From positions 1 through 64,000 of the IMG/VR virus record IMGVR_UViG_3300031952_000001: DNA of 64,000 nucleotides. One strand, given 5' to 3'. Both the position numbers and the translations under genes were made by a program. Below, in pieces: positions 28,529 to 60,143 of this stretch. How positions within the stretch are numbered: position 1 is the first letter of the stretch; every line of letters starts with the position of its first letter. The notes below the pieces were generated by a model. It was not told where the DNA came from. It was given only the letters and a program-made list of their open reading frames with translations, and did no database searches.

Positions 28529-28529
28529 A

Positions 28530-33630: not shown

Positions 33631-33640
33631 GGAGGATTCT

Positions 33641-39670: not shown

Positions 39671-40864
39671 ATGTCGGACGAAGCCAACACTGGTGATCTC
39701 GTGGGGTGCCCGGATCCAGAAATCTTCAAGTGCAGCATCTGTGGAAAGGATAATTTCACAAGTGCAAGGTACCTGAAGACGCACATGACGGCGAAGCACT
39801 CGGGGAAGAAAAAGCCCACGGATGGTCCCGTGGAAGCTCCCGGACCCGAGACTGCCACCCCGCCGCCAGCTGATCCACCTCCGGAGGCCCCTGAGGCCAC
39901 CCCGCCGCCGTCTCGGGCGGAGAAACGGAAGGCTTCCGCTTCGGAAACGGCCGCTCAGGTGTCGGAAGTGGCTGCGGTGCCACCGGCCACCCCTCCAGGG
40001 GTCCCTCCTGCGACCCATCTGGATCTCCCGGTGGGCTCTGTCTTGCAGCTCGATGGCCCGACATGGCGGCAGGATGCCGTCACAGGTGCGTGGACCAGCG
40101 CAGCGGTCTCGAAGTTGACCGTACAGGTGTTCAGTAAGGCTGAATCCGCGGGGGACGTGATGCTCCTCTGCCGGGCCGAAGGGGATCCCTCGACTTGGTC
40201 CGTTCAGCAGGCCTACGCGCTCTCCGGTGCCGTGAACATCCTGAAGGTCGCCCCTTCGGTGTTTCCGGTGCCACCGGCCGGTCCTCCGCCGATCCCGGGC
40301 ACCGCTGCGCAGTCCGAGCCCGTCGAGGATCCGGAGAAGGTGCGTGCCGAGCAGGAAGAGCAGGAGCGCCAGCGGCTCGCAGCCGAAGAGGCGAAGCGAC
40401 TCGCGATGGAGGAGAGCAAGAGGGCCGCGGAAGCCGAGCACCAGAAGAGGAACGACCTGGCCGAGTTCCGGCTCATGGCCTCTACCTATCTTGAGAAGCA
40501 AGAGGCTTTCAGTCTTGCCCAAAGAGATTTCGAGTCCTACAGCTCCGCCTACACGAAGCACTTCGCGGACTGCATCCAGAAGTACGGTTCCGAGGGCTGC
40601 CTGGAAGCCGAGGGCTTCGTGGTCCAGATCTCGGATGACCCCGAGGGCTCCCCGTTCCAAGACGAGGCTGCACTCATCGAGTGGTGCCAGGAGTCTGGGA
40701 ACGACGACCTCCTGACCCTGAAGATCGACAAGGTGAAGTGGGCACGCTTCAAGGAGCAGGTCGAGAAGGGTTCTTCTCCGGAAGCAGGAAGGCTGGACGT
40801 TCGAGTGGTTCTTGCGCAGATGGAAGGCGAGCCCCAGAAGAAGCTGTCGATCCGGAAGTTGTAG
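39671..40864 (+). CDS. Hypothetical protein: C2H2 zinc finger, Pro-rich linker, coiled coil, C-terminal domain weakly Gam/Gp157-like
   Basis: GGAGGA RBS; FKCSICG...YLKTHMTAKH; DEAALIEWCQE...LKIDK. Confidence 0.6.
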   Translation: MSDEANTGDLVGCPDPEIFKCSICGKDNFTSARYLKTHMTAKHSGKKKPTDGPVEAPGPETATPPPADPPPEAPEATPPPSRAEKRKASASETAAQVSEVAAVPPATPPGVPPATHLDLPVGSVLQLDGPTWRQDAVTGAWTSAAVSKLTVQVFSKAESAGDVMLLCRAEGDPSTWSVQQAYALSGAVNILKVAPSVFPVPPAGPPPIPGTAAQSEPVEDPEKVRAEQEEQERQRLAAEEAKRLAMEESKRAAEAEHQKRNDLAEFRLMASTYLEKQEAFSLAQRDFESYSSAYTKHFADCIQKYGSEGCLEAEGFVVQISDDPEGSPFQDEAALIEWCQESGNDDLLTLKIDKVKWARFKEQVEKGSSPEAGRLDVRVVLAQMEGEPQKKLSIRKL

Positions 40865-40885
40865 GAGGCGTGGGAACCCGTTTCT

Positions 40886-41040
40886 GTCATGCGCTATCAG
40901 CTACAACTGACGGCTTGTCCGTCTCCTCCCCGGTTTTCCAGACCGGATCGTTGGAGCGAACTTAGGGGGCGCATGACTCGCCCCATCCTCGCTCAGAGCT
41001 TGCCGAGCGAGGATACCGCGCAACCGGATGTTGTGCGCGG
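40886..41040 (-). ncRNA. Predicted TnpB omega-RNA scaffold overlapping the tnpB 3' end (guide follows at 40885 downward)
   Basis: Established TnpB architecture plus the observed right-end hairpin; 5' boundary is a guess. Confidence 0.45.
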
Positions 41041-42103
41041 CGTTGAGATCAGCATGAAGGCTGTGCCCGCAGGCCTTGCAGAGGAAGAGGTTGCCTTGGC
41101 GGTTGGAGGCTTCAGTGTGACCGCATCGAGAGCACCCCTGGCTGGTGTACCGGGGGTCGATCCCCACTACTACCATTCCGAGCCCTTCAGCTTTGTAGGT
41201 GATGAACTTTCGGAGCTGACCGTAGGCCCAACGTCCAATTTCTCGGCGTTGAACTTTGCGGAGCCGGCGATTCCGGATACCTTCGAGGTCTTCGATGGCG
41301 ATCACAGGGCATCCTGTCCTCTCGGCGAAGGTGACCACTGCCTTGCCGACCTCGTGATTGACTGCTCGCATGAATCGCGCCTCTCGGCCAGACAGCCGTT
41401 TGAGGACCTTAGCGACGGAGCGCGTCGGGTGCTCTGCCTTTCTCTTTTGGAGAGACGCGCGAACATTCGAGTATCGATCACGAAGATGCTTGGTGTGCCC
41501 ACCCTTGCGCATCCAGTGGCGTTTGCCATCTGTGGCGCAGGCGAGGACGTTGATGCCGCGGTCTACGCCGATGACGGCGTCGTTCGGGGCTGTTCTTTGT
41601 TCAACCTCCTTCTTGAAGCTGAGGGTCAGGAAAACGTGCTTCCTGGACACCGAGAGGCGACCATCCCCAAGATTCCAGTTGTTCAACTTGTCTTCGAGGT
41701 CTGGAGGTCCCTGGAAGGGAACTGCCTTGAAACGTCCGTCGACCGTCCAGATAGAGAGTCCGGATGCGCGCAGGGAGACGTCGCGCCCGCGTGTCCCTCC
41801 TTGCAGTATGACGGCTTGTTTTCGGAATTGGCAAGGGGCTTTGGGGCTGCGCTTGTTAGAACGGATGGCCGCATACTCACTGGCGACATGTCGTATGCAG
41901 GAGCCAGCAAGTTGGGCAGACAAACCGACTTCCTTAGCGGGTCTGTAAGCCAATTTTTGAAGTCGAATGGCATTCGACAAACAGCCGTTTTCAAAAGCGA
42001 TCCTGCTCACGAGGTTGCAGGCTTCGGTCCAAGTATTAAGTGTTCGAACAGCAGCTTCTCGGGGCAGGTTGATTTTGATTTTGACTGTTCTCGCTATTTC
42101 CAT
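40901..42103 (-). CDS. tnpB: RNA-guided endonuclease TnpB (400 aa)
   Basis: RuvC-I VIGVDRGI, RuvC-II IAIEDL, zinc finger CSRCG...CKACG, RuvC-III HADLNAAHNI; start MEIARTVKIKI. Confidence 0.93.
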   Translation of the reverse strand: MEIARTVKIKINLPREAAVRTLNTWTEACNLVSRIAFENGCLSNAIRLQKLAYRPAKEVGLSAQLAGSCIRHVASEYAAIRSNKRSPKAPCQFRKQAVILQGGTRGRDVSLRASGLSIWTVDGRFKAVPFQGPPDLEDKLNNWNLGDGRLSVSRKHVFLTLSFKKEVEQRTAPNDAVIGVDRGINVLACATDGKRHWMRKGGHTKHLRDRYSNVRASLQKRKAEHPTRSVAKVLKRLSGREARFMRAVNHEVGKAVVTFAERTGCPVIAIEDLEGIRNRRLRKVQRREIGRWAYGQLRKFITYKAEGLGMVVVGIDPRYTSQGCSRCGHTEASNRQGNLFLCKACGHSLHADLNAAHNIRLRGILARQALSEDGASHAPPKFAPTIRSGKPGRRRTSRQL

Positions 42104-42113
42104 CACATCCCCA

Positions 42114-42142
42114 AGTCTAATCATTCTGTCGGAATTTGTCAA
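42114..42142 (-). promoter_or_regulatory. sigma70 promoter of tnpB (TTGACA-N17-TAGACT)
   Basis: Minus strand reads TTGACAaattccgacagaatgatTAGACT, 10 nt before the ATG. Confidence 0.75.
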
Positions 42143-42173
42143 GTGGGCTTTTTTCCGGTTGACAGGATTCAGC

Positions 42174-43721
42174 ATGCCTAGAGTTTTACTTATAGATGGA
42201 AATCCTTTCCTCTGGCGTGCTGCGCACTCCAGTCCGATGGAGATGGTCGCGAACAAGATCCTGACCTACATCTTCGAGGTCTTGGGCCAGTTCACCCCCG
42301 ACGATATGATCATCTGCTGGGACCGCGGAAAGTCGCGGTGGCGCAGCGAGCTGTACGAGGACTACAAGGCCCACCGCCTCCAGCAGAAGAGGGACAGCGA
42401 CCTGGACCTCGAAGCTCTCAACGAGCAGGGGATCCTCGTACAGCGCTACTTGACCTCGGTCGGGGTTCGCCAGGTGTTGGTCTCCGGCGTCGAGGCGGAC
42501 GACACCCTCGCCTGGCTGTCGGACCACTTCAAGAGCCTCCCCGGGGACTGGCACATCGTGCTCGTGACCGGGGACCGGGACTTGTGGCAGCTCGTCGACT
42601 TCAAGCTCAACGTCTGGGACCACCAGCGCCAGCTCCTCGTCACCCCGGGGGTCGTCGAGGAGGACCTCGGGGTGCCTCCGGACAGGATCGCCGACTTCAA
42701 GGCTCTCGTCGGGGACCCCTCCGACAACCTTCCCGGGGTGAAGCAGGTCGGAGAGAAGACCGCGGCCAAGCTGCTGAAGAAGTTCGGCAGTCTCGGGGAG
42801 ATCCTGAGTCTTGAGAACGTGGAGTTCTTGGAGAAGCGGAAGACGACCGCCCGGGTCCTCCCTGAGGGTGAATTCGTCGCGGAAATGTACCGCCTCGTGA
42901 AGCTGCCGACCTTGCGGGAGGCCGCCGAGTGCCTTTCGAAGGAGGAGCATGATCTTCTCGTCGAAAACCTCACGGTTCCGCTGTCGAGGGACGCCTTCCG
43001 GTCGCAGGTGTTGTCGGAGCGGATCGGCCCTACGTTCCTCACGAGCGTAGGGCGGCTCCCAGCCTACTCTTCGGACCTGACGGGCATGGTGGCGTGCATG
43101 GATCAGAACAGCGGTCAGAATCGGTCCTGGGCCTCCCTGGGGGAGGTCGACTTGGCGATCTCGCAGTGCAACCGGTGCGCCTTGCGGAAGGACTGCGATC
43201 CGGAGGGCCCAACCTACCCCGAGGGCTCGTCCGACCGGCAGATCATGATCCTCGGGAGGAACCCCGGGCTCCAGGAGCGGCGATACGGTCAGCCGTTCTT
43301 CCCTGAGGCTCCTGCCGGCGGTCGGCTGGATCGGTTCTTGGAGGAGGCCGGCATCGACCGGCGGGAGTGCTGGATCACGAACACCTGCAAGTGCTACTCC
43401 CAGGACGACCGCCCGCCGACCTACCCCGAGATCCTGCTCTGCCTGCCGTACCTGAGGGCCGAAATCGACCTCTTGAAGCCCAAGCTGATCATCGCTTTCG
43501 GAAACGAGGCGATGATGGCTGTAACTCCGTACAGGAGCAGGGTCACGAAGCACTGCGGGGAGATCCTGGAAAACCCTGAGGGCCTCATAGGGCCCATCGA
43601 GGCCTACGTCGCCATCAGCCTGCACCCGTCAGCCGCGTGTCGGTCGCCGCAGAACGACAGAGACGTGGAGTACGCTGCCACGGTGGTCCATGACTTTTTA
43701 GCGAAAAGGACGACAAAGTGA
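42174..43721 (+). CDS. Fusion of 5'-3' exonuclease/flap endonuclease and family-4-like uracil-DNA glycosylase (515 aa)
   Basis: LLIDG, YKAHR, GVEADD, TGDRDL, GDPSDNLPGV..VGEKTA (FEN); CNRC, GRNPG, PFF, NTCKC, HPSA (UDG with 4 Fe-S Cys). Confidence 0.88.
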   Translation: MPRVLLIDGNPFLWRAAHSSPMEMVANKILTYIFEVLGQFTPDDMIICWDRGKSRWRSELYEDYKAHRLQQKRDSDLDLEALNEQGILVQRYLTSVGVRQVLVSGVEADDTLAWLSDHFKSLPGDWHIVLVTGDRDLWQLVDFKLNVWDHQRQLLVTPGVVEEDLGVPPDRIADFKALVGDPSDNLPGVKQVGEKTAAKLLKKFGSLGEILSLENVEFLEKRKTTARVLPEGEFVAEMYRLVKLPTLREAAECLSKEEHDLLVENLTVPLSRDAFRSQVLSERIGPTFLTSVGRLPAYSSDLTGMVACMDQNSGQNRSWASLGEVDLAISQCNRCALRKDCDPEGPTYPEGSSDRQIMILGRNPGLQERRYGQPFFPEAPAGGRLDRFLEEAGIDRRECWITNTCKCYSQDDRPPTYPEILLCLPYLRAEIDLLKPKLIIAFGNEAMMAVTPYRSRVTKHCGEILENPEGLIGPIEAYVAISLHPSAACRSPQNDRDVEYAATVVHDFLAKRTTK

Positions 43722-44428
43722 CAGAACATTCAGAATCTCCCAAAGGTACCAACATCTGGAATAACGGTTCCATGATGCTCAAAGAGGAACCTGCCAACCG
43801 TGACGATGTCGTACTTTGGCCCCCTCCAGAGAAGAAGGAGGGGGTGGAGCCCGCCGCGGAGCTTGCTATCGCGGTGGTGGTAGATTCTGCCATGAAAGTG
43901 GAAGAGCCTCTACCTGAGGCGGTTCCTGTAGACTCCAGCCCGCCTCCCTACGGAATGTCCCCCCGGGGGAAACCTGATCCTGTGCGCTACCACCTGGCGG
44001 ACGAGCGCAAGAGTCGTACCTGCAAGTTCCGCTTGGCGAGCCAGTCTGATGAAGGAGATCTCATCACGGTGGAGGGCTACTTCACCGTGAGTGTGTACGA
44101 TGACGGCACCCCCGGCGAGGTGTTCATCGAGATGGGCAAGTCCGGTCACGAGATGAACGGCTTTGCGAACTGCTGGGCCATCGCGATCTCGATGTTGCTT
44201 CAGTACGGGGTACATCCGAAGAAGCTCTACGACAAGTTCAAGCTCCGGGAGTTCTCCCCCAAAGGGATAACCACCCTCACAGGGGTGCCCATCGCCAAGT
44301 CGGTTCCGGACCTCGTGATGCGGTGGATGGAGTACAACCTGCCGCCAACCAAGCAGGAGAAGCTCTCGGAGCACGCCGAGGACACGGACTGGATGAAGCT
44401 CGTGCAAGAGGTAGATGCGAAACGATGA
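43718..44428 (+). CDS. Standalone TSCPD domain protein (class II ribonucleotide reductase C-terminal/NrdJb-like)
   Basis: GYFTVSVYDDGTPGEVFIEMGKSG...AIAISMLLQYGV...SVPDLV. Confidence 0.75.
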   Translation: MTEHSESPKGTNIWNNGSMMLKEEPANRDDVVLWPPPEKKEGVEPAAELAIAVVVDSAMKVEEPLPEAVPVDSSPPPYGMSPRGKPDPVRYHLADERKSRTCKFRLASQSDEGDLITVEGYFTVSVYDDGTPGEVFIEMGKSGHEMNGFANCWAIAISMLLQYGVHPKKLYDKFKLREFSPKGITTLTGVPIAKSVPDLVMRWMEYNLPPTKQEKLSEHAEDTDWMKLVQEVDAKR

Positions 44429-44859
44429 AAATCATCGCCCAGATAGGCTACCGCAAGATCTCGAACCGCAGCCGGGACGGACAGCTCGTCCAGGTGTGGG
44501 TGAACGACATCGAGTGCTCTTGGGCGACCCTCAAGGAGGGCGGCAGATACATCACCCCTAAAACGGAGTCTGCGAAGGGCGTGTTGTGGTACCTCTGGCA
44601 GGGTCAAGTCGGAAATGAGGATACCATCCGACTTTCCGTCAAGACCTCCATCGCGAAGGTCGGTACTGACGAGAAGCGCACCTTCGACGTTCTGTACGCG
44701 GTGCGGGAGAACGTTGCTGTTCGGGAGATCGTAGTGCCTGGTGTCGGGCACCGCGGGTACCCGTTGCTGAAGGGCCGGCTGGTGGAGATCGCGTCCGTAT
44801 CGGAGCAGGACAAGCGGGCCGCGGATCTCGAAGAGTTTATGGAGCAGGAGGACTTTTGA
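44425..44859 (+). CDS. Hypothetical protein
   Basis: ATGA overlap; GC3-rich codons. Confidence 0.65.
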   Translation: MKIIAQIGYRKISNRSRDGQLVQVWVNDIECSWATLKEGGRYITPKTESAKGVLWYLWQGQVGNEDTIRLSVKTSIAKVGTDEKRTFDVLYAVRENVAVREIVVPGVGHRGYPLLKGRLVEIASVSEQDKRAADLEEFMEQEDF

Positions 44860-46667
44860 TTACGATCCTTCTCAAGGACCGTAAGATCTGCGCGCAGCTC
44901 GACATGCGCCATCCGGCGTACACGAACCTGTGTCTGATCATCCAGTCCCTGCTGTCCGCCAGGGCCATCGACGACTGCACCTGGTCGATCTCCTACAACG
45001 ACCTCCAGAGGCTCCGACGCGCTCTGGACTACAGCGGGCTGGTCGAGGGCAGGAACGTCACCGAGGATGCCTTCCAGTTCGTCTCGTGGATTCACTCTCA
45101 GAGGGAGAGGAACGACCAGATCAAGAAGGGGGTCAACAACGAGCACATTCGGGCGATTCTCAACCCGCGCTTGAAGGTCACCCCTTACGAAGACCAGTAC
45201 ACCGGGGTGGCATACGCGGTGAACAACCGCAGGGTGGGCATTTTCGACGACATGGGCTGCGGCAAGAGCTTAGAAGCATTGTCGTCTGTTGTATTTCTGG
45301 GTTCTGCGATTCGTAAGACGCTTCTCGTCAGCCCTTACACTGTTCAGATCGGCTTCGCCCGGGAGATCGCGGAACATACGAACCTGAAAGGGCTCCCGGT
45401 ACCAAGCGGCCGGCAGCAGGCGCTGGAGTTCATCAAGTCGAACATGCACACGTCCTGGGACATCATGATGACCCACCCTGAGAACATCATCGGGACGAAG
45501 AATTCTAGCGTCGGTGGTGAGATCCTGAACCTCATCATGAGCATGACGTGGGACATGATCATCATCGATGAGTTCCACATGTACAAGAACCTGGACGCCA
45601 AGCGGACCCAGTGCATCTTGTCCCTGTTGAACGACACCCGGGACCGTGCGGGAAAGCGGCCCCGGGCCATCGTCATGACTGGAACTCCGATCAGTGAGAG
45701 CCCGATGAATGCCTACGTGGTGCTGAAGGTGCTCTCGTACGACTACATTCCGCACATCACACGCTTCGAGGACCACTTCGTCGTGAAGCAGGAGGTCTCG
45801 TACGGCGAGAAGGGTAAGCACCTCAAGGTCACCGGCTACAAGAATCTCGACGAGCTGAAGGAGCTTCTGGAGGCGGTCTCCATCAGGCGCTCCAAGGAGG
45901 ACATGGTCGGCTTCCCGGATCGGGTTTTCATGATTCGCGACGTCGTGCTTGAAGGCCGGCAGCTCAAGCTCTACCAGGCGCTCTGTGGAGAGGTCATTCG
46001 GGATCTCCCCCAGGACAGCCAGATCAACATGGAACAGCTGTTCAGCTCCAACCGGATGCTCCGTCTCCGTCAGCTCATGAACCATCCTTCGATTCTGGAC
46101 GAGAAGGGGGACTCGGCGAAGTACCAGGGCTGTGATGCCCTCTTGGAGGAGATCTTGGCCGACCCCGAGGCCAAGGTCGTGCTCTGGACGGAGTTCCGTC
46201 CCGCGGTCGACCTGCTGTACGAACGCTACAATGACCTCTATGGGGCTGTGAAAATATACGGAGGTGTGGATAATGTTGCGCTTTTGCGCATCAAGCAGGA
46301 GTTCGAGGAGTCTGAGCGCCCACGGGTAGCCGTCTGCATTCCGGCGAAGGCAGGCACCGGGGTCGACTTCCTGGCGAGGGCCCGTACCGCCATTTATTTG
46401 GACAGACCTCACTCTTTCACGCACTTGAAGCAGTCGTTGGACCGGATTCATCGTCGAGTTGCCGCTGAAAAGAAGACTCGGCTGGATTTTATTCGTTCTA
46501 AGCCTGCTACGGTCATTTTCTTGGATGTGGTCAACTCGATAGACGTGCTGATCCGAGAGAATTCCATTAGAAAACAGAACCTTGTCGATGCCGTGACCGT
46601 GTCAGACGAAAAGTTGATCCGGCTCGGCAGATCGGATATATTGCGGTACCTCGGAAAGGCGGCCTGA
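44856..46667 (+). CDS. SNF2/SF2 helicase
   Basis: DDMGCGKS (motif I), IIIDEFH (II), MTGTP (III), LRLRQLMNHP, QSLDRIHR (VI). Confidence 0.9.
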   Translation: MITILLKDRKICAQLDMRHPAYTNLCLIIQSLLSARAIDDCTWSISYNDLQRLRRALDYSGLVEGRNVTEDAFQFVSWIHSQRERNDQIKKGVNNEHIRAILNPRLKVTPYEDQYTGVAYAVNNRRVGIFDDMGCGKSLEALSSVVFLGSAIRKTLLVSPYTVQIGFAREIAEHTNLKGLPVPSGRQQALEFIKSNMHTSWDIMMTHPENIIGTKNSSVGGEILNLIMSMTWDMIIIDEFHMYKNLDAKRTQCILSLLNDTRDRAGKRPRAIVMTGTPISESPMNAYVVLKVLSYDYIPHITRFEDHFVVKQEVSYGEKGKHLKVTGYKNLDELKELLEAVSIRRSKEDMVGFPDRVFMIRDVVLEGRQLKLYQALCGEVIRDLPQDSQINMEQLFSSNRMLRLRQLMNHPSILDEKGDSAKYQGCDALLEEILADPEAKVVLWTEFRPAVDLLYERYNDLYGAVKIYGGVDNVALLRIKQEFEESERPRVAVCIPAKAGTGVDFLARARTAIYLDRPHSFTHLKQSLDRIHRRVAAEKKTRLDFIRSKPATVIFLDVVNSIDVLIRENSIRKQNLVDAVTVSDEKLIRLGRSDILRYLGKAA

Positions 46668-47824: not shown

Positions 47825-48516
47825 GCGAAGAGGTCTGGGTCGTTCCCGAAGTGGCTTTGGCCTTTGTTCAAGGGTTGCAGTTCCCCCCGAAGCCCGAGTT
47901 CGCAGGGTTCGCGCAGTGCGATAACAGCATCCGCTGCTTCTGGACCACTCTGAAGAAGGCCTGCTTCACACCGCGCTCCTTGGCGGAGACTGACACGACG
48001 CACAAGCAGGTCATCCCCTATACGGTGGTCACCTCTGAAGGGCGCTATCTGTCCTACGAGCGGTCCGGTGGGAACGAGGCGCGGCTGGACAAGAAGTTTT
48101 CGATAGGCGTCGGTGGGCACATCAACCCAGAGGATGAGCTGACCAATTGGAAGAGGGTCGTGTTCTTCTCGGCTATGCGGGAGATCGATGAGGAGCTGTG
48201 CACTCTGGAGAACAACCGACGCTTTCCGGCCAGCTGGGCTGTGTACGACCAGCTGATGATCAAGGGGATCCTCTACGACGACTCTGACGAGGTCGGGCGC
48301 GTGCACGTCGGGGTGGTCCTACATGCTGACGTCAAGCCGGAGGTGGCGAAGCTCTTTCAGATGATCTCCGAGGGCAAGAACCTGACGTGGATGACGCCCG
48401 AGGAACTGCGGGCCTTGGGGGAGCGCCTGGAGGGGTGGTCGAGGAAATCGTTGAGGGCGCTCGAAGCCGGCGCGGTGGGGTGCTCGACCTCGCTGAGAGA
48501 TCTTTCTGAAGGATGA
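47821..48516 (+). CDS. NUDIX-family phosphoesterase (YmaB/COG4112-like)
   Basis: KQVIPY...EARL..KFSIGVGGHIN...MREIDEEL...GILYDDSDEVGRVHVG. Confidence 0.8.
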   Translation: MSEEVWVVPEVALAFVQGLQFPPKPEFAGFAQCDNSIRCFWTTLKKACFTPRSLAETDTTHKQVIPYTVVTSEGRYLSYERSGGNEARLDKKFSIGVGGHINPEDELTNWKRVVFFSAMREIDEELCTLENNRRFPASWAVYDQLMIKGILYDDSDEVGRVHVGVVLHADVKPEVAKLFQMISEGKNLTWMTPEELRALGERLEGWSRKSLRALEAGAVGCSTSLRDLSEG

Positions 48517-49259
48517 GTGACTGGTCTCCATTGAAGGCGCGGATCCAGGGCAGCTGTCCTGTGTGCTCCGGTACGGGTTTCGTCGGTGACGAGCTGTGCA
48601 CCTGCGCCATTAAGTTCCGAGTGTATAACCGGATGACGAAGGGGGGCTTCCACGAGGCGACTCTGGACCTTGTGAGTTCTCCGGAGTATCGGTGGCCTCT
48701 CATCGAGCAGGGTGCTGCTGAGCTGACCTACTTCGTGGGCAACCCCTTCGAGGTCCTGTCTCACGGTCTGGGTCTGTACCTGTTCTCGAAGGAGAACGGC
48801 CGCGGGAAGACGACGTTGGCGCACTACCTCGTGTACATGCTCTTGTGGGAGTTGTCGAAGACCGAGAACTATAGCCCGGATCGGACCTACTCTTTCGAGA
48901 ACATGCACGAGATGTGTGAGAAGGAGCGCCGGGGCTGGGATGACGAGACCTGGAAGTCGACGATCTTGGTGATCGACGACATCGGGACCGAGTCGCGGAG
49001 TGTGCAGTGGAAGAAGGACATCGCGCTCACGATGATGCACCGGATACTGCACTTCCGGCAGGACTACAGGCTCCCAACGATCTTCACCTCGAACTACGCG
49101 CCGAGCAGCGTCTCATCCTTCTACGAGGGGGTGCTTGATTCCGTGCTGGAGATCCGACCTGACGGCGTGATCGGGGGTCGCTCCCTGCGCCAGGTCGAGG
49201 TCGGCGGTGGTGAAGACTATCGGTTACAGCAAGGCGATCAAGGCGGGTGGCCGGTTTGA
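48513..49259 (+). CDS. DnaC/IstB-like AAA+ helicase loader
   Basis: N-terminal CPVC...CTC zinc motif; GRGKTT; ILVIDDIGTE; PTIFTSN. Confidence 0.8.
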   Translation: MSDWSPLKARIQGSCPVCSGTGFVGDELCTCAIKFRVYNRMTKGGFHEATLDLVSSPEYRWPLIEQGAAELTYFVGNPFEVLSHGLGLYLFSKENGRGKTTLAHYLVYMLLWELSKTENYSPDRTYSFENMHEMCEKERRGWDDETWKSTILVIDDIGTESRSVQWKKDIALTMMHRILHFRQDYRLPTIFTSNYAPSSVSSFYEGVLDSVLEIRPDGVIGGRSLRQVEVGGGEDYRLQQGDQGGWPV

Positions 49260-51607: not shown

Positions 51608-52365
51608 AGAGTGCTCTGCAAAAACAGATTTTGACTATCACGGAGGCTCTGAAGCGCGACGATTCTGAGCAGGCGCAGGTTTTCTGCAAGATGGCTCCTT
51701 TCGTTTTCAAGTCGGTGGTCCGGATCGCTCAGATGACCAATACTTCCGAGGAAGACATCCTCGGAGAAGTCCTCTGCGTGTTCTCTGCTGCTTGTGATCT
51801 CTACAAGGCCCCTGTCTACAAGTACCGTGAGTCCTTGTACCAGTGTCGTGGGGAGGAGGGGGGACTACTTCTTCTGGAGACCCCGAAAGGGAACAAGATT
51901 CGAAGGTCTCTGAGAGTGGAGAAGTCGAAGGTCACCGAAGTACGCCGAGCAGAGTTCTTCAACTTCCTTTACAAAAAGATCCAGCAGCAGTGTGTTGATA
52001 TTTTGCGGGGATCTTTCATGTGTAAGAGGGCTGTTTCTACCGAGGTGATCTCTTTGGAGGGTTGCGATGACGGCATGCTCGGTGCGCGGGTTGATTTTTC
52101 CAGCGATCCAGAGAGCCTCTTCTCGGCGGCGCAGATGTACTATGAAATCGTTCCGCAGCTTTCTGATCAGGCACGAAAAGTCTTTGATCTCTTTATAGAG
52201 GGTGCGTTTAAGTCGAACAAGGGTTTGTCGAACAGTCTGCGGATGAGCATGCGCAGCGTCTCGGCGGCGAAGCAGGAAATACTTCGTGCCTACTACCGCA
52301 CGGAGCGCTCTTTCGTTCAGGATTCGGAGTTGCAACCCATCTACCTAACGGCGGGTGACTTTTGA
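51604..52365 (+). CDS. Putative phage sigma70-family factor
   Basis: Region-2-like helices (EEDILGEV...FFNFLYKKIQQQCVDILR), VISLE, region-4-like LSDQARKVFDLF...LSNSLRMSMRSVSAAKQEI; TTG start. Confidence 0.5.
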   Translation: MKSALQKQILTITEALKRDDSEQAQVFCKMAPFVFKSVVRIAQMTNTSEEDILGEVLCVFSAACDLYKAPVYKYRESLYQCRGEEGGLLLLETPKGNKIRRSLRVEKSKVTEVRRAEFFNFLYKKIQQQCVDILRGSFMCKRAVSTEVISLEGCDDGMLGARVDFSSDPESLFSAAQMYYEIVPQLSDQARKVFDLFIEGAFKSNKGLSNSLRMSMRSVSAAKQEILRAYYRTERSFVQDSELQPIYLTAGDF

Positions 52366-53516
52366 TAACGATTCAGGACAACGGCTTCATCGTCGACTAC
52401 CACTTGATGACCGACTTCTGTCGAGCCCTGGAGAAGTGCAACCCCAAGAACGACTACGTCTACCTGTCCTACGATGGCGCGGTTTTCAGCATGTTCTCGC
52501 AGACCGTTACTGCTTCCGTCATCGTGTCTCTCAACGCGACAGGAGGCAAGACCTTTGGTTTCGGTGTCGAGTCGGGGAAGTTTTTGTCCTTGTGGAAGAA
52601 GCTGTATGTGGGCAGCACCATTAAGTTCAAACCTTCCCGGGAGCAGCTCATCATCTCGGAGGACAACATCTCGGTGAAGTTCCCGACGGTACAGCACATC
52701 AAGCACTACAAGTTTCCCGAGATGATCACGGTATTTGGTCCACATGTCGAGGAGCTGACGAAGGCCTTGTCGATTTGTGAGGTCTCCGTTGGCGCGAACA
52801 AGCAGGCTCCGGGGATCCTGATCGACAACACCGCTCCGGGGATGTGCCGGGTGGTTAAGATCGGGAATTACTCCTACCGGATGTGCTCTTGCAGCAAGCA
52901 ATCGTTCGGGGATGTCCGTATCGTCGTTTCGGACGAGTTCTGTTCCGCGGTTTCCGCGCTTTCGAAATGGTCTAAGTCTTCGTCCTTGTTCGGGTCCATC
53001 ACGGCGCTTATGGTGTCTCCGGCCAAGGTCGGAGCTGTGCTGAGCAGCGGCGTCCAGTTCTACATGCCCACCTTGCACGACGCGATCCCGTCGTCCTATG
53101 TGTACGACTTCCGGTTGCTGCCGAACAGCCTGGAGCAGGTCGCTCGTGAGGGGCGTGTCTACACGTTCAGCCAGAAGCGGCTCTCCGAGGTGCTCGATCT
53201 GGTGGCTGCGGTGATCGGGACCGAGGAGTCAATGCTCCTGATGGAGATCGATGGTCTGGCAGCGGCGTCCGGCAATCCAGTGTTCAAGATCAGCGCGAAG
53301 ACCCACGACGGCTGCGAGGTCTCGGAGTTGGTAGAGGCCCTTTCGAAGGGCCCGACGGATCTGGAACCCTTTAGGGTAAACAAGAGTCAGGCGCTCTTGG
53401 CACTCAAGAGCTACGAAGGAAATCTGGTTCTTATCGACCGGCTCAACAACCCCCTGCTCGTCCTGCAAGACGAGTCCGGGAGGGACGTGACGTTCCTCCT
53501 CAAAGCTCCGGCGTGA
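52362..53516 (+). CDS. Putative DNA sliding clamp (beta-clamp-like, 384 aa)
   Basis: Length, alternating alpha/beta three-domain pattern, C-terminal PLLVL...VTFLL; DnaX-like loader nearby. Confidence 0.55.
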   Translation: MITIQDNGFIVDYHLMTDFCRALEKCNPKNDYVYLSYDGAVFSMFSQTVTASVIVSLNATGGKTFGFGVESGKFLSLWKKLYVGSTIKFKPSREQLIISEDNISVKFPTVQHIKHYKFPEMITVFGPHVEELTKALSICEVSVGANKQAPGILIDNTAPGMCRVVKIGNYSYRMCSCSKQSFGDVRIVVSDEFCSAVSALSKWSKSSSLFGSITALMVSPAKVGAVLSSGVQFYMPTLHDAIPSSYVYDFRLLPNSLEQVAREGRVYTFSQKRLSEVLDLVAAVIGTEESMLLMEIDGLAAASGNPVFKISAKTHDGCEVSELVEALSKGPTDLEPFRVNKSQALLALKSYEGNLVLIDRLNNPLLVLQDESGRDVTFLLKAPA

Positions 53517-54846: not shown

Positions 54847-57063
54847 ATGTTTTTCTCTAACATCGAGGTCCCGAAGACCTATCACCTGATCGACAGCCCC
54901 AAGAAGTTCTCGTGGCTGGCTTCGGTGTTGCTCGACTCGAAGGAGTTCTCCTTCGACATCGAGACCAACTACCCCACCTCCAAGTCGATGAAGGACAAGA
55001 TCCCGAGGAACTACCCTCACAAGGTGTGTGGCATCTCCTTCTCTTGGGGGCGGACGGAGATCGTTCGCCCTTGGACTCCCGGGAACGCGGCCTACATCCC
55101 GTTGAGCCGTTCTGACGATTCGCCTTTTTGGGGATCCCGTCAGGTCCATATCGAGGGTCTCCTCAAGGAGATCCTTGAGAGCCCCATTCCGAAGGTGGCT
55201 CAGAACGGCAAGTTCGATGTTCGGCAGCTCGCGAACCTCATGCAGATCTACACAAGGGACTTGAAGTTCGATACGATGCTCGCACACACGCTTCTGGACG
55301 AAGACTGCGTGACCTCTTCGCACGCCTTGAAGTCCAACTTCAATGTCGAGGGGAAGGTGACCAAGCTGGGCATCTCGGATGCGTACTTGGACACCGCGGC
55401 GAGCCAGTTCAAGGGTGATCTCGATCAGGCTTTGAGGTTCTACGATCCCCAGATGCTGCGCTACTCCAAGGTCCCGCTGAACGTCCTCTACCCCTACGGT
55501 TGCGCCGACGCCGATCTGACCCTGTCGTTGAAGTACGTGTTCATGCCGCTTCTGGAGGCTGAGGAACTCATTGCGTTGAACGACAACCTGATCATTCCGT
55601 TGCAGCACACCTTGATGCTCATGGAGCTGCACGGGGTTCCTTTGGACCTGCATCGGGCTCAGCAGGTGAAGGCTGAGCAGGAGCAGATCATCGAGGTCAA
55701 CACTCAGCGCATCCAGGCGATCTGCAACGCGAAGTTCAACGTCAGCTCCACGGATCAACTCGGGAAGCAGCTTTTCGAGGTCATGGGGATACCCGGAAAG
55801 CACACTGCTGACGGCTCCTGGAGCACGGACATGGACTTTATCAGGGGTTTGGACCACCCCATTCGTGAGCCCCTCCTGGAGTTCCGTCGCGCGCAGCAGA
55901 TCCACAACCTCTATGCCGAGCCGGCGCTGAACAAGGTTGTCGAGATCACGAACCAGGGCTACATTGGCTGGGTCCACCCGGAATACTGGATGGACTCGAA
56001 GACCGGACGCCTGAAGCTGAGGGACCCCAACTTGACGACGTTGCCGCGCCCCGAGAACGGCGGCCTCGTCGTGAAGTCGATGTGGTGCACGGACGACGCG
56101 CACCGGATGGTCTTCAAGGACTTCTCTCAGATCGAGCTGAAGGTCATCGCGCACATCTCGGGAGAGCCGGTCTGGGTGGACGGCTTCAACAACGGCTACG
56201 ATATGCACGCCGCGATGGCGAAGAAGATCTGGAACCTTCCTTGTGAGGTTCATCAGGTGAAGGACCTGTACTCCAAGGAGCGCTCTCATGCCAAGACCAT
56301 CAACTTCGGCATCGCGTACGGGCAGAGTGAGAAAGCTCTTGCTGAGAGCCTCGGGATCTCACAGGAGGAGGCTCACAAGCTGATCTGGGAGGACTACTTC
56401 GGAGCGGCTCCGGTGCTGAAGCAGTGGATCGACGATACCCATGAGTTCGTCAAAAACTACGGTTACGTTCGGAACATCTTCGGTCGCAGGCGGCACCTCC
56501 CTGAGGCTAGTACAGTGGTCCCCAAGGGTGTTCCCGGGCCCACCTGGGAGAAGCGCCCCACTTGCTACAAGAAGGACGGTCCGTATCCGAAGTGGTTGGG
56601 CATCCCTCTGGAAGAACTCTACCCGATGCCCATAGACGTGTTGCAGGACCACCTCAAGTCGAAGAAGGGGAACACGTTTAGCTCTTGTAGAAGCTGTCAC
56701 TACGTTCGGTCCTGTGTCATCAACCACGAGGTACTCCGGGCTCAGAGCATCGTCAACAGGGCGCTCCGTCAGTCCGTGAACAGCCCCATCCAGGGCTCCG
56801 CGGTCGACATGGCGTCTCTGTCTTTGGTTTGGATCAGTAGGGAGATCATCAAGCACGGCTTGAAGGCTGCTCCGATCCTCCACATCCACGACGAACTGGT
56901 GGTCCACTCGCACGTCGAGTGCGTTGAGCAGGTGAGCCGCCTCATGGACGACTGCATGACGACCCGGCTGCGAGAGGTCACGCAGTTCAGGGTGCCATTG
57001 ACGGTCGACACGGAGGTTTGCCAAAGGTGGAGCGACCGTTATCGACACAAAGAAGAGGCGTGA
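54847..57063 (+). CDS. polA: Family A DNA polymerase with 3'-5' exonuclease domain
   Basis: FDIET, QNGKFD, DTML (exo); TGRL...PNL, DFSQIELKVIAH (A), RSHAKTINFGIAYG (B), IHDEL (C). Confidence 0.95.
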   Translation: MFFSNIEVPKTYHLIDSPKKFSWLASVLLDSKEFSFDIETNYPTSKSMKDKIPRNYPHKVCGISFSWGRTEIVRPWTPGNAAYIPLSRSDDSPFWGSRQVHIEGLLKEILESPIPKVAQNGKFDVRQLANLMQIYTRDLKFDTMLAHTLLDEDCVTSSHALKSNFNVEGKVTKLGISDAYLDTAASQFKGDLDQALRFYDPQMLRYSKVPLNVLYPYGCADADLTLSLKYVFMPLLEAEELIALNDNLIIPLQHTLMLMELHGVPLDLHRAQQVKAEQEQIIEVNTQRIQAICNAKFNVSSTDQLGKQLFEVMGIPGKHTADGSWSTDMDFIRGLDHPIREPLLEFRRAQQIHNLYAEPALNKVVEITNQGYIGWVHPEYWMDSKTGRLKLRDPNLTTLPRPENGGLVVKSMWCTDDAHRMVFKDFSQIELKVIAHISGEPVWVDGFNNGYDMHAAMAKKIWNLPCEVHQVKDLYSKERSHAKTINFGIAYGQSEKALAESLGISQEEAHKLIWEDYFGAAPVLKQWIDDTHEFVKNYGYVRNIFGRRRHLPEASTVVPKGVPGPTWEKRPTCYKKDGPYPKWLGIPLEELYPMPIDVLQDHLKSKKGNTFSSCRSCHYVRSCVINHEVLRAQSIVNRALRQSVNSPIQGSAVDMASLSLVWISREIIKHGLKAAPILHIHDELVVHSHVECVEQVSRLMDDCMTTRLREVTQFRVPLTVDTEVCQRWSDRYRHKEEA

Positions 57064-58185: not shown

Positions 58186-59061
58186 ATGGCGAAGGCACAA
58201 TGGGTTCGTTGGAAGGACGGCGGGGGCCCTCGGGTCATCGGATCCGTCGGGTTCAACCCCGCGCAGCCCTGGGGGCCCTGGACGAAGGTCCTCGGCGTGG
58301 TCGCGCGTTGCGAGGGCAACCACGACACCGTCGTCATGTACGACGGCACGGGGGTGACCTGGGGGTTCCTACAGTGGACTTTCACCAGCGGCCGGCTCCA
58401 GAAGCTCCTGGAGAGCTTCAAGTCGATCCCGCTGGAGAACGGACACCACACCTTGTTCGATCAGGTGTGCTTGGAGGCTATCGGGGGTCCTCAGGTCTTC
58501 TCCCGGTTCGGCTTCCAGATCAGAGATGGGAAGTTCTGGGTTGGTGGAGTGGCCCTTGACCCCAGCAATTCTGCCAGCAAGAAGTGGATCGTCGACATCT
58601 GCATGGGTGTCGAGTTGGCTAACCCGAACAAGACGGCGCTCGCGCTCGCGCAGCTGTTCGCGGACATGGGTGCGAAGCCCGGTGTCCCCGAGGCCCAGCT
58701 CGCGTACGCCAAGGCCGAGTTCGCCCGGCAGCTCGACTACCCGAGGCCTCCGCTGGGAGGGAGGACCATCAGGGACCTGCTCAAGGCGGACAACCCGGCG
58801 TCGTGGGACTCCGCTCTGGTCGCGTTGTTCTTCAACCTGTGGCAGAACAACCCGGGGGCGGCCTACAAGCTGTTCTTGAAGGCCACGTCCAGCTCCAGTG
58901 ATCTCGTCGAGGACTACTTCCGGAAAGCCTGGAAGATGACGAACCTCTCGACGTTCGGGCAGTGGGGCTGGAAGAACGACCCGAAGAGCCCGAGGTGTTT
59001 GCGCATCGCCAAGGCGATCAAGGAGTTCTACGGCATCGCTTTGCCGTTCTATAAACCTTGA
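58186..59061 (+). CDS. Putative endolysin/lysozyme-fold glycosidase
   Basis: VVARCEGNHDTVVMYDGTGVTWGFLQW resembles the catalytic Glu helix plus beta-hairpin of lysozyme-fold enzymes. Confidence 0.55.
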   Translation: MAKAQWVRWKDGGGPRVIGSVGFNPAQPWGPWTKVLGVVARCEGNHDTVVMYDGTGVTWGFLQWTFTSGRLQKLLESFKSIPLENGHHTLFDQVCLEAIGGPQVFSRFGFQIRDGKFWVGGVALDPSNSASKKWIVDICMGVELANPNKTALALAQLFADMGAKPGVPEAQLAYAKAEFARQLDYPRPPLGGRTIRDLLKADNPASWDSALVALFFNLWQNNPGAAYKLFLKATSSSSDLVEDYFRKAWKMTNLSTFGQWGWKNDPKSPRCLRIAKAIKEFYGIALPFYKP

Positions 59062-60143
59062 TGCAGTACGCGGTAAAATACCGACCTGCGACGTTCGCAC
59101 AGGTCGTCGGCCAGCCGGTGACGTGCCGGATCTTGAGGAACTCGATTCTGATGGACCGGGTACCGGCGGCGATCCTCTTCGCCGGTACTCGGGGCACCGG
59201 GAAGACCACCCTGGCACGGTTGTACGCTCGCGCGCTGAACTGCGAGAACTTCAAGACCGTGGGCGACCTGTGCGGAACGTGTCCTTCCTGTCGAGAGGCG
59301 GCTGACTCCCACCTCTCGATCCTTGAGCGTGACGCGGCCTCTTACAACGGGGTCGACGACGTGCGAGACCTGGAAGGGATCCTGCACCAGACGGTGATCC
59401 ACAAGTACCGCGTCCTGATCCTCGACGAGTGCCACATGCTCTCGAAGCAGGCCCAGGCCGCGCTGCTCAAGCAGGTCGAGGACCCTCCGCCGCGGACCGT
59501 GTTCCTGCTGGCGTCCACGGATCCTCAGAAGGTCGAGGATACCCTGCGGTCGAGGTGTCTCTCAGCCCCTCTGAGGGTGCTCAACTCGAAGGAAGTCGCG
59601 GACAACGCGAGGATGATCCTCACCGCTGAGGGCCGGCAGTACACCGAGGACTTCGTGGACCGCTTAGGGCTTCTTGGCGGAGGCTCTCTCCGGGACGCCC
59701 AGCAGATCCTCGAAAGCATGGTCTTGGCCGCGGGAGACGGCGTAGTTGACATCAACCTCCTCCGGGATTCCGTTGGTGTCATCTCTCGGGAGGAGTACGG
59801 ACAGCTCGCGGAGATGCTCGACAGGAAGGATTTGAGACTTTTTTTAGAAAAAATTCGATGCTGGTACTACGAGGGTTTGGACCTTCAGAACCTCTTTATG
59901 GAAGGAATTCCTGTCTTGTTACGCGACTTTTCAATGTTTCTTGCAGGTATTCCTTCAGAAAATGTCGAGTGCTTAAGTGGCCTGGGATTCGAATCCTTTT
60001 CTCGTAACTTAAGATTAGGGCTCCCTGACGTTGAACGCCTGGTTCGGGAGTGGGAGGTGACCGTCGAGTTCATGAGGATGACTTCGAACCCGATGGTCAT
60101 CTGGAGCATGTTCGCAGTGAAGGCGTGTGAGTGTGGGCGGTGA
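59061..60143 (+). CDS. dnaX: Clamp loader, DNA polymerase III gamma/tau-like
   Basis: AVKYRPATFAQVVGQ; GTRGTGKTT; CGTCPSC; ILDECHMLS; LRSRC; GSLRDA. Confidence 0.92.
   Translation: MQYAVKYRPATFAQVVGQPVTCRILRNSILMDRVPAAILFAGTRGTGKTTLARLYARALNCENFKTVGDLCGTCPSCREAADSHLSILERDAASYNGVDDVRDLEGILHQTVIHKYRVLILDECHMLSKQAQAALLKQVEDPPPRTVFLLASTDPQKVEDTLRSRCLSAPLRVLNSKEVADNARMILTAEGRQYTEDFVDRLGLLGGGSLRDAQQILESMVLAAGDGVVDINLLRDSVGVISREEYGQLAEMLDRKDLRLFLEKIRCWYYEGLDLQNLFMEGIPVLLRDFSMFLAGIPSENVECLSGLGFESFSRNLRLGLPDVERLVREWEVTVEFMRMTSNPMVIWSMFAVKACECGR

What the first reader, a model, noticed from the sequence alone, without database searches (positions are those of the whole stretch)
42174..43721. Flap endonuclease fused to an Fe-S uracil-DNA glycosylase with an altered motif A
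Seen: one uninterrupted ORF holds a complete 5'-3' exonuclease followed by a family-4-like UDG with all four Cys, but GRNPG (43254-68) instead of GE(A/G)PG. Established: family-4 UDG domains occur fused to phage polymerases (SPO1-type), and the polymerase here lacks a 5'-3' exo domain. Inference: a single-chain base-excision/Okazaki-processing enzyme, possibly with changed base specificity (e.g. modified bases or foreign DNA). NUDIX and RNR-domain neighbours point to nucleotide-pool control.
Basis: partly seen in the sequence, partly recalled or inferred. Interest (0 to 1): 0.6.

Follow-up and report, generated by a model that had tools for sequence, protein, structure and literature searches.

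The report
Phage flap endonuclease fused to Fe-S UDG
An uncultured 212-kb phage encodes one protein that joins the flap-cutting nuclease of lagging-strand DNA synthesis to an iron-sulfur uracil-DNA-glycosylase domain of a virus-associated, biochemically untested subtype; this fusion has not been described in any cultured phage searched here.

Summary
ORF 42174-43721 (+) encodes 515 aa: a complete 5'-3' exonuclease/FEN (residues 4-244), a structured helical linker, and a family-4-like UDG domain (about 325-500). The UDG domain has four Cys, GRNPG at 43254-43268 and motif B HPS...R.

The fusion is not unique. About 90 metagenomic clusters share it, almost all viral, at a conserved place in the replication module of related 130-212 kb phages. 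None was found in cultured phages or in BFVD.

GRNPG is not a private oddity either. It marks a virus-associated subclass of Fe-S UDGs, found stand-alone, fused to PolA at either end, or fused to FEN. In that subclass motif A (R/Q)N always goes with KC[YFH][ST] instead of KCRPP. The uracil-reading Asn, the His of motif B and the Glu that blocks thymine in Thermus UDGa are all kept, so a changed base specificity is not supported.

In motif-intact members the UDG domain is more conserved than the FEN. In at least 7-10 lineages both glycosylase motifs decayed together while the Cys ligands stayed.

Best reading: a replisome FEN carrying a probably active uracil glycosylase domain that also has a non-catalytic role. 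This is a new variant of known kinds, of moderate interest.

The parts
42174..43721 (+). FEN-UDG fusion gene, 515 aa (P0001)
   Evidence: Open frame. Three Pfam domains. Start fixed by 92 homologues and an AGGA RBS. AF2 model pLDDT 95.6, pTM 0.93.
42183..42665 (+). 5'-3' exonuclease N-terminal (PIN-like) domain, residues 4-164. Acidic residues D8, D50, E107, D109, D110, D134, D136; arch residues Y64, K65, R68.
   Evidence: PF02739 1e-24. These residues are invariant or nearly invariant in 36 and 93 sequences. Foldseek matches M. smegmatis FenA, T5 FEN and E. coli ExoIX.
42672..42905 (+). H3TH / SAM-fold domain of the FEN, residues 167-244, with GD181xSD184NxPG
   Evidence: PF01367 1.1e-18. G180, D181, D184 and G193 are invariant.
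42906..43145 (+). Structured helical linker, residues about 245-324, packing the FEN against the UDG
   Evidence: Helices 247-310 at pLDDT about 87-96; pTM 0.93 for the whole chain.
43167..43178 (+). C332-x2-C335, first two putative [4Fe-4S] ligands
   Evidence: C332 invariant, C335 in at least 90% of 93 sequences. They align with the CxxC of UdgX.
43254..43268 (+). Motif A, G361-R362-N363-P364-G365
   Evidence: Located. GRNPG in 55 of 93 fusions and in 44 of the 150 best library representatives.
43275..43277 (+). E368, seven residues after G361; counterpart of Thermus UDGa E47 (thymine/hmU block)
   Evidence: Nearly invariant (E51 of alignment A3). Glu in 45 of 49 RN-type and all EA/EG-type domains. 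Role taken from PMC9796141.
43380..43394 (+). N403-T-C-K-C407: uracil-reading Asn and third Cys ligand, followed by Y-S instead of R-P
   Evidence: N and C invariant in A3. Aligns with UdgX N91. The covariation of KC[YFH][ST] with (R/Q)N is shown.
43440..43442 (+). C423, fourth Cys ligand, 16 residues after C407
   Evidence: Invariant. Aligns with a Cys of UdgX.
43623..43643 (+). Motif B, H484-P-S-A-A-C-R490
   Evidence: H and P invariant, R at least 90% in A3. Aligns with HPSSLLR of UdgX.
54847..57063 (+). Phage PolA: 3'-5' exo plus polymerase, no 5' nuclease, no UDG. Presumed functional partner.
   Evidence: PF00476 1.3e-81 and PF01612 4.6e-08. No second UDG or FEN in the genome.
52362..53516 (+). 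Candidate sliding clamp (weak match)
   Evidence: phrog_947, DNA polymerase processivity factor, 3.4e-05.
59058..60143 (+). Clamp-loader-like AAA+ protein
   Evidence: PF13177 DNA_pol3_delta2 1.4e-29.
43718..44428 (+). TSCPD-domain protein, downstream neighbour that overlaps the fusion gene by GTGA and is syntenic in a relative
   Evidence: PF12637 3.5e-10. The same neighbour (DUF3310+TSCPD) is present in L008.

Best explanation
The gene encodes a two-activity replisome accessory enzyme of an uncultured jumbo-phage lineage.

The N-terminal half is a complete two-metal flap endonuclease. It supplies the 5'-nuclease that the phage's PolA lacks, removing RNA primers and 5' flaps during Okazaki-fragment maturation and long-patch repair.

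The C-terminal half is a [4Fe-4S]-type UDG domain built on the family-4 scaffold. It belongs to a virus-associated subclass in which the water-activating Glu of GE(A/G)PG is replaced by Arg-Asn (GRNPG), and the R-P after the third Cys ligand is replaced by aromatic-Ser/Thr. I infer that Asn363 positions the hydrolytic water, as the Asn of GINPG/GMNPG does in MUG and SMUG1. I also infer that the pocket still selects uracil, since N403, H484, R490 and the thymine-blocking E368 are kept.

The two halves are packed rigidly through a helical linker. Uracil excision and flap removal would therefore be delivered to the same stretch of nascent phage DNA. AP-site incision and ligation would be left to the host.

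The domain also has a second, non-catalytic role that needs the Fe-S fold but not the active site (a DNA handle or replisome docking), because many sister lineages kept the fold and Cys ligands after losing both glycosylase motifs.

Shown: domain content, motifs, conservation pattern, distribution. Inferred: both enzyme activities, the role of Asn, uracil specificity, and the coupling.
For: - Domains and fold.
- FEN catalytic set: D8, D50, E107, D109, D110, D134, D136, D181, D184 and Y64/K65/R68 are invariant or nearly invariant.
- It is the only FEN and the only UDG in the genome, and PolA lacks both.
- GRNPG, N403, HPS..R and E368 are conserved across fusions down to about 30% identity.
- In motif-intact pairs the UDG domain is more conserved than the FEN (FEN 0.40 against UDG 0.54). 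In motif-decayed pairs it is far less conserved (FEN 0.51 against UDG 0.35). Motifs A and B decay together.
- Strict covariation: E[A/G] goes with KC-RP (about 51 sequences), (R/Q)N goes with KC-[YFH][ST] (about 54), with no mixed cases among the main classes.
- The same GRNPG/GQNPG domain is fused to PolA at the N- or C-terminus, or stands alone in phage replication modules. This links UDG, PolA and FEN in the Rosetta-stone sense.
- Conserved synteny in relatives.
- ThyX is present.
- Literature: the motif-A Glu activates water in family 4 (PMC10359453); Thermus E47 blocks thymine/hmU (PMC9796141).
Against: - No member of the GRNPG subclass has been assayed, and the motif is absent from the paper library searched.
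- The canonical family-4 water activator (Glu) is missing. UdgX H109S/E52N lost about 75-fold kcat/Km (PMC10359453).
- The domain scores below NCBIfam's family-4 cut-off (99.5 against 125.3 bits).
- At least 7-10 independent losses of the motifs in orthologues show that glycosylase chemistry is dispensable for the fusion's core role.
- No phage AP endonuclease or ligase was found to complete a repair pathway.
- The rigid inter-domain packing is a prediction only, and I could not read coordinates to measure the geometry of the two active sites.
Confidence: 0.6

Rival explanations
1. The UDG-like domain is catalytically silent in this protein too. It serves only as an Fe-S DNA-binding or replisome-docking module, as proposed for N4-like UDG-PolAs. 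It might tether the FEN to PolA or to the DNA and so rebuild a Pol I-like enzyme in trans.
For: - The Glu of motif A is lost, and the domain scores below the family-4 cut-off.
- Glycosylase motifs were lost repeatedly while the Cys ligands were kept in 30-31 of 31 decayed members.
- The decayed orthologue P0084 still models as the same rigid two-domain protein (pLDDT 94.4, pTM 0.92) with a UDG fold.
- In UDG-PolAs the domain sits fixed between the exo and pol domains, and N4-like ones lack catalytic residues (PMC10201439).
Against: - GRNPG, N403, HPS..R and E368 are held invariant over deep divergence.
- The UDG domain is more conserved than the FEN in motif-intact lineages and relaxes only where the motifs are lost.
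- The same motif set is conserved in about 200-aa stand-alone proteins, which have no fusion partner to dock.
- The PolA-UDG complex test gave no verdict, so docking has no direct support.
Confidence: 0.2
2. One reading: the altered motif A gives a new base specificity (hmU, hypoxanthine, oxidised or modified bases, or foreign DNA). The fusion would then process modified or foreign DNA rather than ordinary uracil.
For: - Motif A has the form GxNPG, as in the broad-specificity families 2 and 3 (MUG/TDG, SMUG1; established knowledge).
- UDG-PolAs occur in phages with hmU DNA such as SPO1 (PMC10201439).
- The role of Arg362 is unknown.
Against: - The Glu that blocks 5-substituted uracils in Thermus UDGa is kept. 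Its absence in DR0022 allows hmU excision, and A50E removes it (PMC9796141). It is kept here as E368 and in 45 of 49 RN-type domains.
- The Asn and His that read uracil are kept.
- ThyX is present and no ThyA-type hydroxymethylase was found.
- No base-modification genes were seen in the parts annotated. Only about a third of the genome was scanned.
Confidence: 0.12
3. The fusion is an assembly or gene-calling artefact: two adjacent genes read as one.
For: One IMG/VR relative (L032) has the FEN and UDG parts in separate frames about 1.8 kb apart. Another large phage contig (L030) has a closely related stand-alone GRNPG UDG.
Against: - The frame is uninterrupted here.
- The same single ORF appears in about 90 independent clusters from JGI, ENA, Logan and NCBI and in 16 IMG/VR contigs.
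- The linker is conserved and confidently folded.
Confidence: 0.01

Closest known systems
Family 4 UDG (UDGa), e.g. Thermus thermophilus TTUDGA (PDB 1UI0)
   Same: - Alpha/beta UDG fold (Foldseek TMt 0.84).
- Four Cys in the same order, with the third and fourth 16 residues apart.
- The G..PG frame of motif A.
- Glu at +7 (thymine block), uracil-reading Asn, motif B HPS...R.
   Different: - Motif A is GRNPG, not GE(A/G)PG.
- KC is followed by Y-S, not R-P.
- It is below the TIGR00758 cut-off.
- It is a C-terminal domain of a FEN, not a 190-200 aa enzyme.
- The subclass is found in viral contigs (58 IMG/VR loci against 2 loci in 185,579 prokaryote species genomes). Named bacterial hits all carry GE(A/G)PG.
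UdgX of Mycobacterium smegmatis (PDB 6AIL, 6AJO)
   Same: Best sequence match among solved structures (7e-22, about 30% identity). Same Fe-S scaffold, Asn and motif B.
   Different: It lacks the KRRIH R-loop and its His109, a 9-residue gap in the alignment. Covalent capture of AP-DNA is therefore not expected. Motif A is GRNPG rather than GEQPG.
UDG-PolA fusions of phages (SPO1-, N4- and PaBG/Lupandier-type)
   Same: - A family-4-like UDG domain is wired into the phage replication machinery (PMC10201439, PMC7412058).
- The very same GRNPG/GQNPG subclass occurs fused to PolA at either end (P0147, P0148, P0167, P0154, P0199).
- PaBG-type phages also pair the PolA with a separate 5'-3' exonuclease, a beta clamp and a clamp loader, the same parts list as here.
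- Catalytic residues are lost in some lineages (N4-like).
   Different: Here the UDG domain sits on the FEN and the PolA has none. Cultured phage UDG-PolAs that I checked have other motif A forms: QENPY in Bacillus JL, GDNPN in PMBT14 and STP12, GEAPG in ctfzr933.
Stand-alone and Pol I-linked bacterial/phage 5' nucleases (T5 D15 FEN, M. smegmatis FenA, E. coli ExoIX, Taq Pol I N-domain)
   Same: PIN-like plus H3TH fold. Full two-site carboxylate set in the E-A-D-D, D-x-D and GDxSDN patterns, and arch Lys/Arg.
   Different: It carries a 270-aa C-terminal extension (helical linker plus UDG). Unlike ExoIX it keeps the second metal site; that comparison rests on established knowledge of ExoIX.
MUG/TDG and SMUG1 (UDG families 2 and 3)
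   Same: Motif A of the form G-x-N-P-G, with Asn at the position that holds the catalytic water (established knowledge).
   Different: Those families have no Fe-S cluster and a different motif B. No sequence or structure match to them appeared among the listed PDB hits. The resemblance is confined to one motif and is probably convergent.

Membership tests
5'-3' exonuclease / flap endonuclease (Pol I 5'-nuclease, T5 D15 type) | PIN-like N-domain followed by an H3TH domain | tested here: met
   PF02739 1e-24 and PF01367 1.1e-18, both above cut-off. Foldseek matches FenA, T5 FEN and ExoIX.
5'-3' exonuclease / flap endonuclease (Pol I 5'-nuclease, T5 D15 type) | Acidic residues of both metal sites, and basic arch residues | tested here: met
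   D8, D50, E107, D109, D110, D134, D136, D181, D184, Y64, K65 and R68 are invariant or at least 90% conserved. Assignment to metal sites is by the E-A-D-D / D-x-D / GDxSDN patterns known from Taq and T5 (established knowledge).
5'-3' exonuclease / flap endonuclease (Pol I 5'-nuclease, T5 D15 type) | Structure-specific 5'-flap cleavage | not testable with these tools
   Needs an enzyme assay.
Family 4 UDG (UDGa) | UDG alpha/beta fold | tested here: met
   PF03167 5e-25. Foldseek 1UI0 TMt 0.84 and UdgX TMt about 0.77.
Family 4 UDG (UDGa) | Four Cys ligands of a [4Fe-4S] cluster | tested here: met
   C332, C335, C407 and C423 are conserved in nearly all of 93 sequences. The cluster itself cannot be tested here.
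Family 4 UDG (UDGa) | Motif A GE(A/G)PG with the water-activating Glu | tested here: not met
   GRNPG. The role of the Glu is from PMC10359453.
Family 4 UDG (UDGa) | Motif B HP(S/A)xxxR and the uracil-reading Asn | tested here: met
   H484-P-S...R490 and N403, invariant in A3, aligned to UdgX H178, R184 and N91.
Family 4 UDG (UDGa) | Curated family score (NCBIfam TIGR00758, cut-off 125.3 bits) | tested here: not met
   99.5 bits. Stand-alone GRNPG proteins only just pass (126-130 bits), while a canonical GEAPG protein scores 250.8.
Family 4 UDG (UDGa) | Uracil excision from ss and ds DNA | not testable with these tools
   Needs an enzyme assay.
UdgX | R-loop KRRIH with His109 that cross-links to AP-DNA; motif A GEQPG | tested here: not met
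   A 9-residue deletion at the R-loop in the alignment. Motif A is GRNPG. TIGR03914 scores 100.3 against a cut-off of 189.95.
UDG-PolA (SPO1 / N4 / PaBG type) | UDG domain in the same chain as the family A polymerase | tested here: not met
   PolA 54847-57063 has exo and pol domains only. There is a single UDG match in the genome, inside the FEN gene.
MUG/TDG or SMUG1 (families 2 and 3) | Overall sequence or structure kinship beyond the GxNPG motif; no Fe-S cluster | tested here: not met
   All 28 PDB sequence hits and the UDG hits among the 50 best Foldseek matches listed are family-4 proteins or UdgX. Four Cys ligands are present.

The most novel reading that the evidence does not exclude
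The (R/Q)N-P-G plus KC[YFH][ST] proteins form a distinct, virus-associated UDG family that runs Asn-type (MUG/SMUG-like) chemistry on the Fe-S family-4 scaffold. It acts as a replisome-coupled uracil-surveillance module. The module is interchangeable between PolA and FEN and docks on the polymerase in trans. In the FEN fusion it would let one protein recognise a uracil in nascent DNA and remove the displaced strand that carries it.
Probability: 0.25. Interest if true: 0.75.

Novelty: new variant of a known kind. Interest (0 to 1): 0.5.

Why it matters
Both halves are textbook enzymes. Joining them in one rigid chain is not described in the literature I could search, and it is absent from 50,697 deposited phage records and from BFVD.

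The finding points to a sizeable, virus-associated subclass of iron-sulfur UDGs with a coherent, covarying rewiring of the active site that nobody has assayed. That subclass offers a natural experiment. Motif-intact and motif-decayed orthologues sit at the same genomic position, so one can ask what an Fe-S UDG fold does for a replisome apart from cutting uracil. This question is also open for the N4- and SPO1-type UDG-polymerases.

A compact FEN-UDG could also be useful as a reagent. The find is solid but incremental: no new fold, no new chemistry shown.

Tried and rejected
- **PolA docking.** This is evidence neither for nor against binding.
- **Cultured relatives.** No DNA match of 40000-46000 in INPHARED phages. 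tblastn of the whole protein found no record covering at least 80% of it. BFVD had no full-length structural match (best TMq 0.45). PolA is at most about 31% identical to any deposited phage. No cultured relative or host could be named.
- **Literature.** GRNPG, GQNPG and GxNPG gave only irrelevant hits. A search for fusion papers gave only UDG-PolA work.
- **Upstream gene 40889-42181.** No Pfam or PHROG match, no Atlas hit, and only 2 homologues. Dropped.
- **Close kinship of PolA to UDG-PolAs.** Rejected: 24-28% identity to P0148 and P0167.
- **UdgX-type cross-linking.** Considered and rejected (no R-loop).
- **Gene-fusion artefact.** Considered and rejected (independent assemblies).
- **Limits.** I could not obtain model coordinates, so the distance and orientation of the two active sites, and whether Arg362 occupies the place of the Arg of KCRPP, remain untested. 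No other genetic code was needed or used.
Full report
**1. The observation**

The stretch 42174-43721 on the + strand is an open frame of 515 codons.
- The ORF listing extends the frame to an ATG at 41967. All homologues start at the Met of 42174.
- That ATG has an AGGA 6 nt upstream. It overlaps the stop of the preceding gene (ATGCCTAG), and the gene's TGA overlaps the GTG of the next gene.
- Pfam finds 5_3_exonuc_N (4-164), 5_3_exonuc (167-244) and UDG (350-497), each far above its cut-off.
- The four Cys are C332, C335, C407 and C423.

**2. The genome**

The window is the first 64 kb of a 211,982-bp virus record that CheckV rates complete.
- GC is about 60% and nearly all real genes lie on the + strand.
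- The fusion gene sits at the head of a replication module:
  - TSCPD protein 43718-44428
  - SNF2 helicase 44856-46667
  - helicase loader 48513-49259
  - DnaB 49247-50623
  - primase 50663-51607
  - a weak clamp candidate 52362-53516
  - PolA 54847-57063
  - a clamp-loader-like protein 59058-60143.
- The fusion gene is the only 5'-nuclease and the only UDG in the genome.
- Found: ThyX at 67538-68089.
- Not found: ThyA, trimeric dUTPase, NUDIX, Xth- or Nfo-type AP endonuclease, and NAD- or ATP-dependent ligase.
- No deposited phage is close. There was no DNA match, and PolA is at most about 31% identical to any deposited phage.

**3. The FEN half**

- D8, D50, E107, D109, D110, D134, D136, D181, D184 and Y64/K65/R68 are invariant or nearly so in 36 and in 93 sequences.
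- They fall in the E-A-D-D, D-x-D and GDxSDNxPG patterns of Pol I-type 5' nucleases (established knowledge).
- The model's N-terminal half matches M. smegmatis FenA, T5 FEN and E. coli ExoIX.

This is a complete, two-metal-site flap endonuclease by every sequence criterion.

**4. The UDG half**

- The best solved relatives are UdgX (7e-22) and the family-4 enzymes of Thermus, Thermotoga and Sulfolobus. Foldseek gives TMt 0.84 to 1UI0.
- The UdgX R-loop (KRRIH) is deleted, so covalent capture is not expected.
- Kept: both CxxC Cys, K-C407, C423, the Phe of G-x-PF, N403 (UdgX N91), H484 and R490 (UdgX H178 and R184), and E368.
- E368 is seven residues after the first Gly of motif A. That is the position of Thermus E47, which blocks thymine. 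Its absence lets DR0022 cut hmU (PMC9796141).
- Changed: E to R and A/G to N in motif A, and R-P to Y-S after C407.
- In family 4 the motif-A Glu activates the water (PMC10359453).
- In families 1-3 the catalytic residue is the third residue of motif A: Asp in GQDPY, Asn in GINPG and GMNPG (established knowledge). GRNPG puts an Asn there.
- The domain scores 99.5 bits against TIGR00758, whose cut-off is 125.3.

**5. GRNPG is a class, not an accident**

- An exhaustive profile search of 1.84 billion representatives with the UDG-domain profile gave, among the best 150:
  - 44 with GRNPG
  - 13 with GQNPG
  - 62 with GE(A/G)PG.
- The two kinds differ at a second site in lock-step. E[A/G] goes with KC-RP, and (R/Q)N goes with KC-[YFH][ST]. 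The +7 Glu is kept in both.
- The (R/Q)N domains come in four settings:
  - about 190-230 aa stand-alone proteins
  - exo-pol-UDG proteins (P0147, P0148)
  - UDG-exo-pol proteins (P0167, P0154, P0199)
  - FEN-UDG proteins.
- Three stand-alone examples lie in phage-like replication or recombination modules.
- A pattern scan found 58 loci in IMG/VR, 16 of them FEN fusions. Only 2 loci, both MAG contigs, turned up in one genome each of 185,579 prokaryote species. These scans depend on patterns and give lower bounds.
- Named bacterial relatives all have GE(A/G)PG.
- Cultured-phage UDG domains that I read have GEAPG, QENPY or GDNPN.
- No paper in the library mentions GRNPG in this sense.

**6. The fusion family**

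- About 90 clusters at 90% identity share the three domains (30-95% identity). They come from JGI, ENA, Logan and NCBI assemblies, on contigs up to 188 kb.
- The ESM Atlas holds them as one cluster of 84 members, 98% viral.
- Synteny is kept in a 55%-identical relative (L008) and in a 34%-identical one (L009): two giant ORFs, one or two small genes, FEN-UDG, DUF3310/TSCPD, SNF2, DnaB, primase.
- A more distant group (P0090-P0093) has a different context.
- AlphaFold2 on the 93-sequence alignment gives pLDDT 95.6 and pTM 0.93. The two halves and the helical linker are therefore predicted as one rigid body.

**7. Intact and decayed orthologues**

- 55 of 93 sequences have GRNPG, and 57 of 88 scorable ones keep RNP, N403 and HP.
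- The other 31 have lost motif A and usually motif B with it, yet keep the four Cys (30-31 of 31).
- On a tree built from the FEN and linker columns only, the loss needs 10 changes, at least 7 of them forced by well-supported branches.
- Domain identity for pairs with matched FEN identity:

| Pair type | FEN identity | UDG identity |
|---|---|---|
| Both intact | 0.40 | 0.54 |
| Both intact | 0.49 | 0.58 |
| Both decayed | 0.51 | 0.35 |
| Both decayed | 0.59 | 0.37 |

- In intact pairs the UDG domain is more conserved than the FEN. In decayed pairs it is much less conserved.
- The decayed orthologue P0084 still models at pLDDT 94.4 and pTM 0.92 and still matches UdgX and 1UI0. Its alignment shares rows with intact members, which favours that outcome.
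- My reading has two parts:
  - Where the motifs are intact, as in this gene and its nearest kin, they are under strong selection, most simply because the site is an active glycosylase.
  - The fold with its cluster has a further role that survives the loss of chemistry.

**8. Mechanism proposed**

- The FEN supplies the 5' nuclease missing from PolA.
- The UDG domain excises uracil. This is inferred from the pocket residues and from the presence of ThyX, with Asn363 holding the water.
- The rigid fusion brings both activities to the same nascent DNA.
- The host would provide AP incision and ligation.
- The same UDG subclass is attached to PolA in other phages (PMC10201439; PMC7412058 for PaBG, which has the same parts list). 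This argues that the UDG, PolA and FEN work together.
- Whether the domain docks on PolA in trans could not be decided (no verdict).

**9. Comparison and novelty**

- It works like a family-4 UDG plus a Pol I-type FEN.
- It fails two membership criteria of family 4 (motif A and the curated score), and it fails the defining features of UdgX.
- It is not a UDG-PolA.
- The architecture and the (R/Q)N subclass are undescribed in the sources I could search, but both parts are of known kinds. I rate it a new variant of a known kind.

Confidence in the main reading is 0.6. Interest is 0.5.

Noticed in passing
window 63456-64000, continuing to G000:C1:65795 (L011:3456-5795): A RecA gene of 779 aa. The RecA core (residues 39-212) and the RecA C-terminal domain (719-771) are separated by about 500 residues with no Pfam match at E<=0.001, possibly an intein or another insert.
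   Followed up: no
window 56512-56767 (PolA residues about 556-640; Cys at about 56686-56715): The PolA has an insert, absent from the two UDG-PolAs it was aligned with. It contains C614-x2-C617-x5-C623, possibly a small metal-binding element.
   Followed up: no
protein P0133 (908 aa, metagenomic relative): A FEN-UDG relative whose UDG domain is interrupted right after the K-C ligand by about 350 residues, including a LAGLIDADG endonuclease domain. This is probably an intein at the most conserved site of the domain.
   Followed up: partly
L032 (IMGVR_UViG_3300037067_013058), about 3-611 and 2411-3076: A relative in which the FEN part and a GRNPG UDG part lie in different frames about 1.8 kb apart, so the gene is split or interrupted. 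L030 (a 170-kb contig) has a 200-aa stand-alone GRNPG UDG 51% identical to this domain, with no FEN within 2.5 kb upstream.
   Followed up: partly
window 40889-42181 (+): The gene overlapping the start of the fusion gene has no family match and only two homologues in 5.8 billion proteins, one 97% and one 41% identical. The 97% homologue is 402 aa, so the true start is probably near 40973.
   Followed up: partly
window 52362-53516, 59058-60143 and 54847-57063: A family A polymerase is encoded together with a clamp-loader-like protein and a weak sliding-clamp candidate. This is the same combination reported for PaBG-type jumbo phages (PMC7412058).
   Followed up: partly
G000:C1:66051-67178, 67538-68089 and 68231-70366 (outside the window): An Mre11/SbcD-like phosphoesterase, ThyX, and a 711-aa protein without a match lie just beyond the window.
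   Followed up: partly
window 1-64000: No tRNA or tmRNA genes in the window. Very long ORFs at 28497-32123 (1208 aa) and 33623-38389 (1588 aa) are conserved in position upstream of the fusion gene in relatives. Their function was not examined.
   Followed up: no
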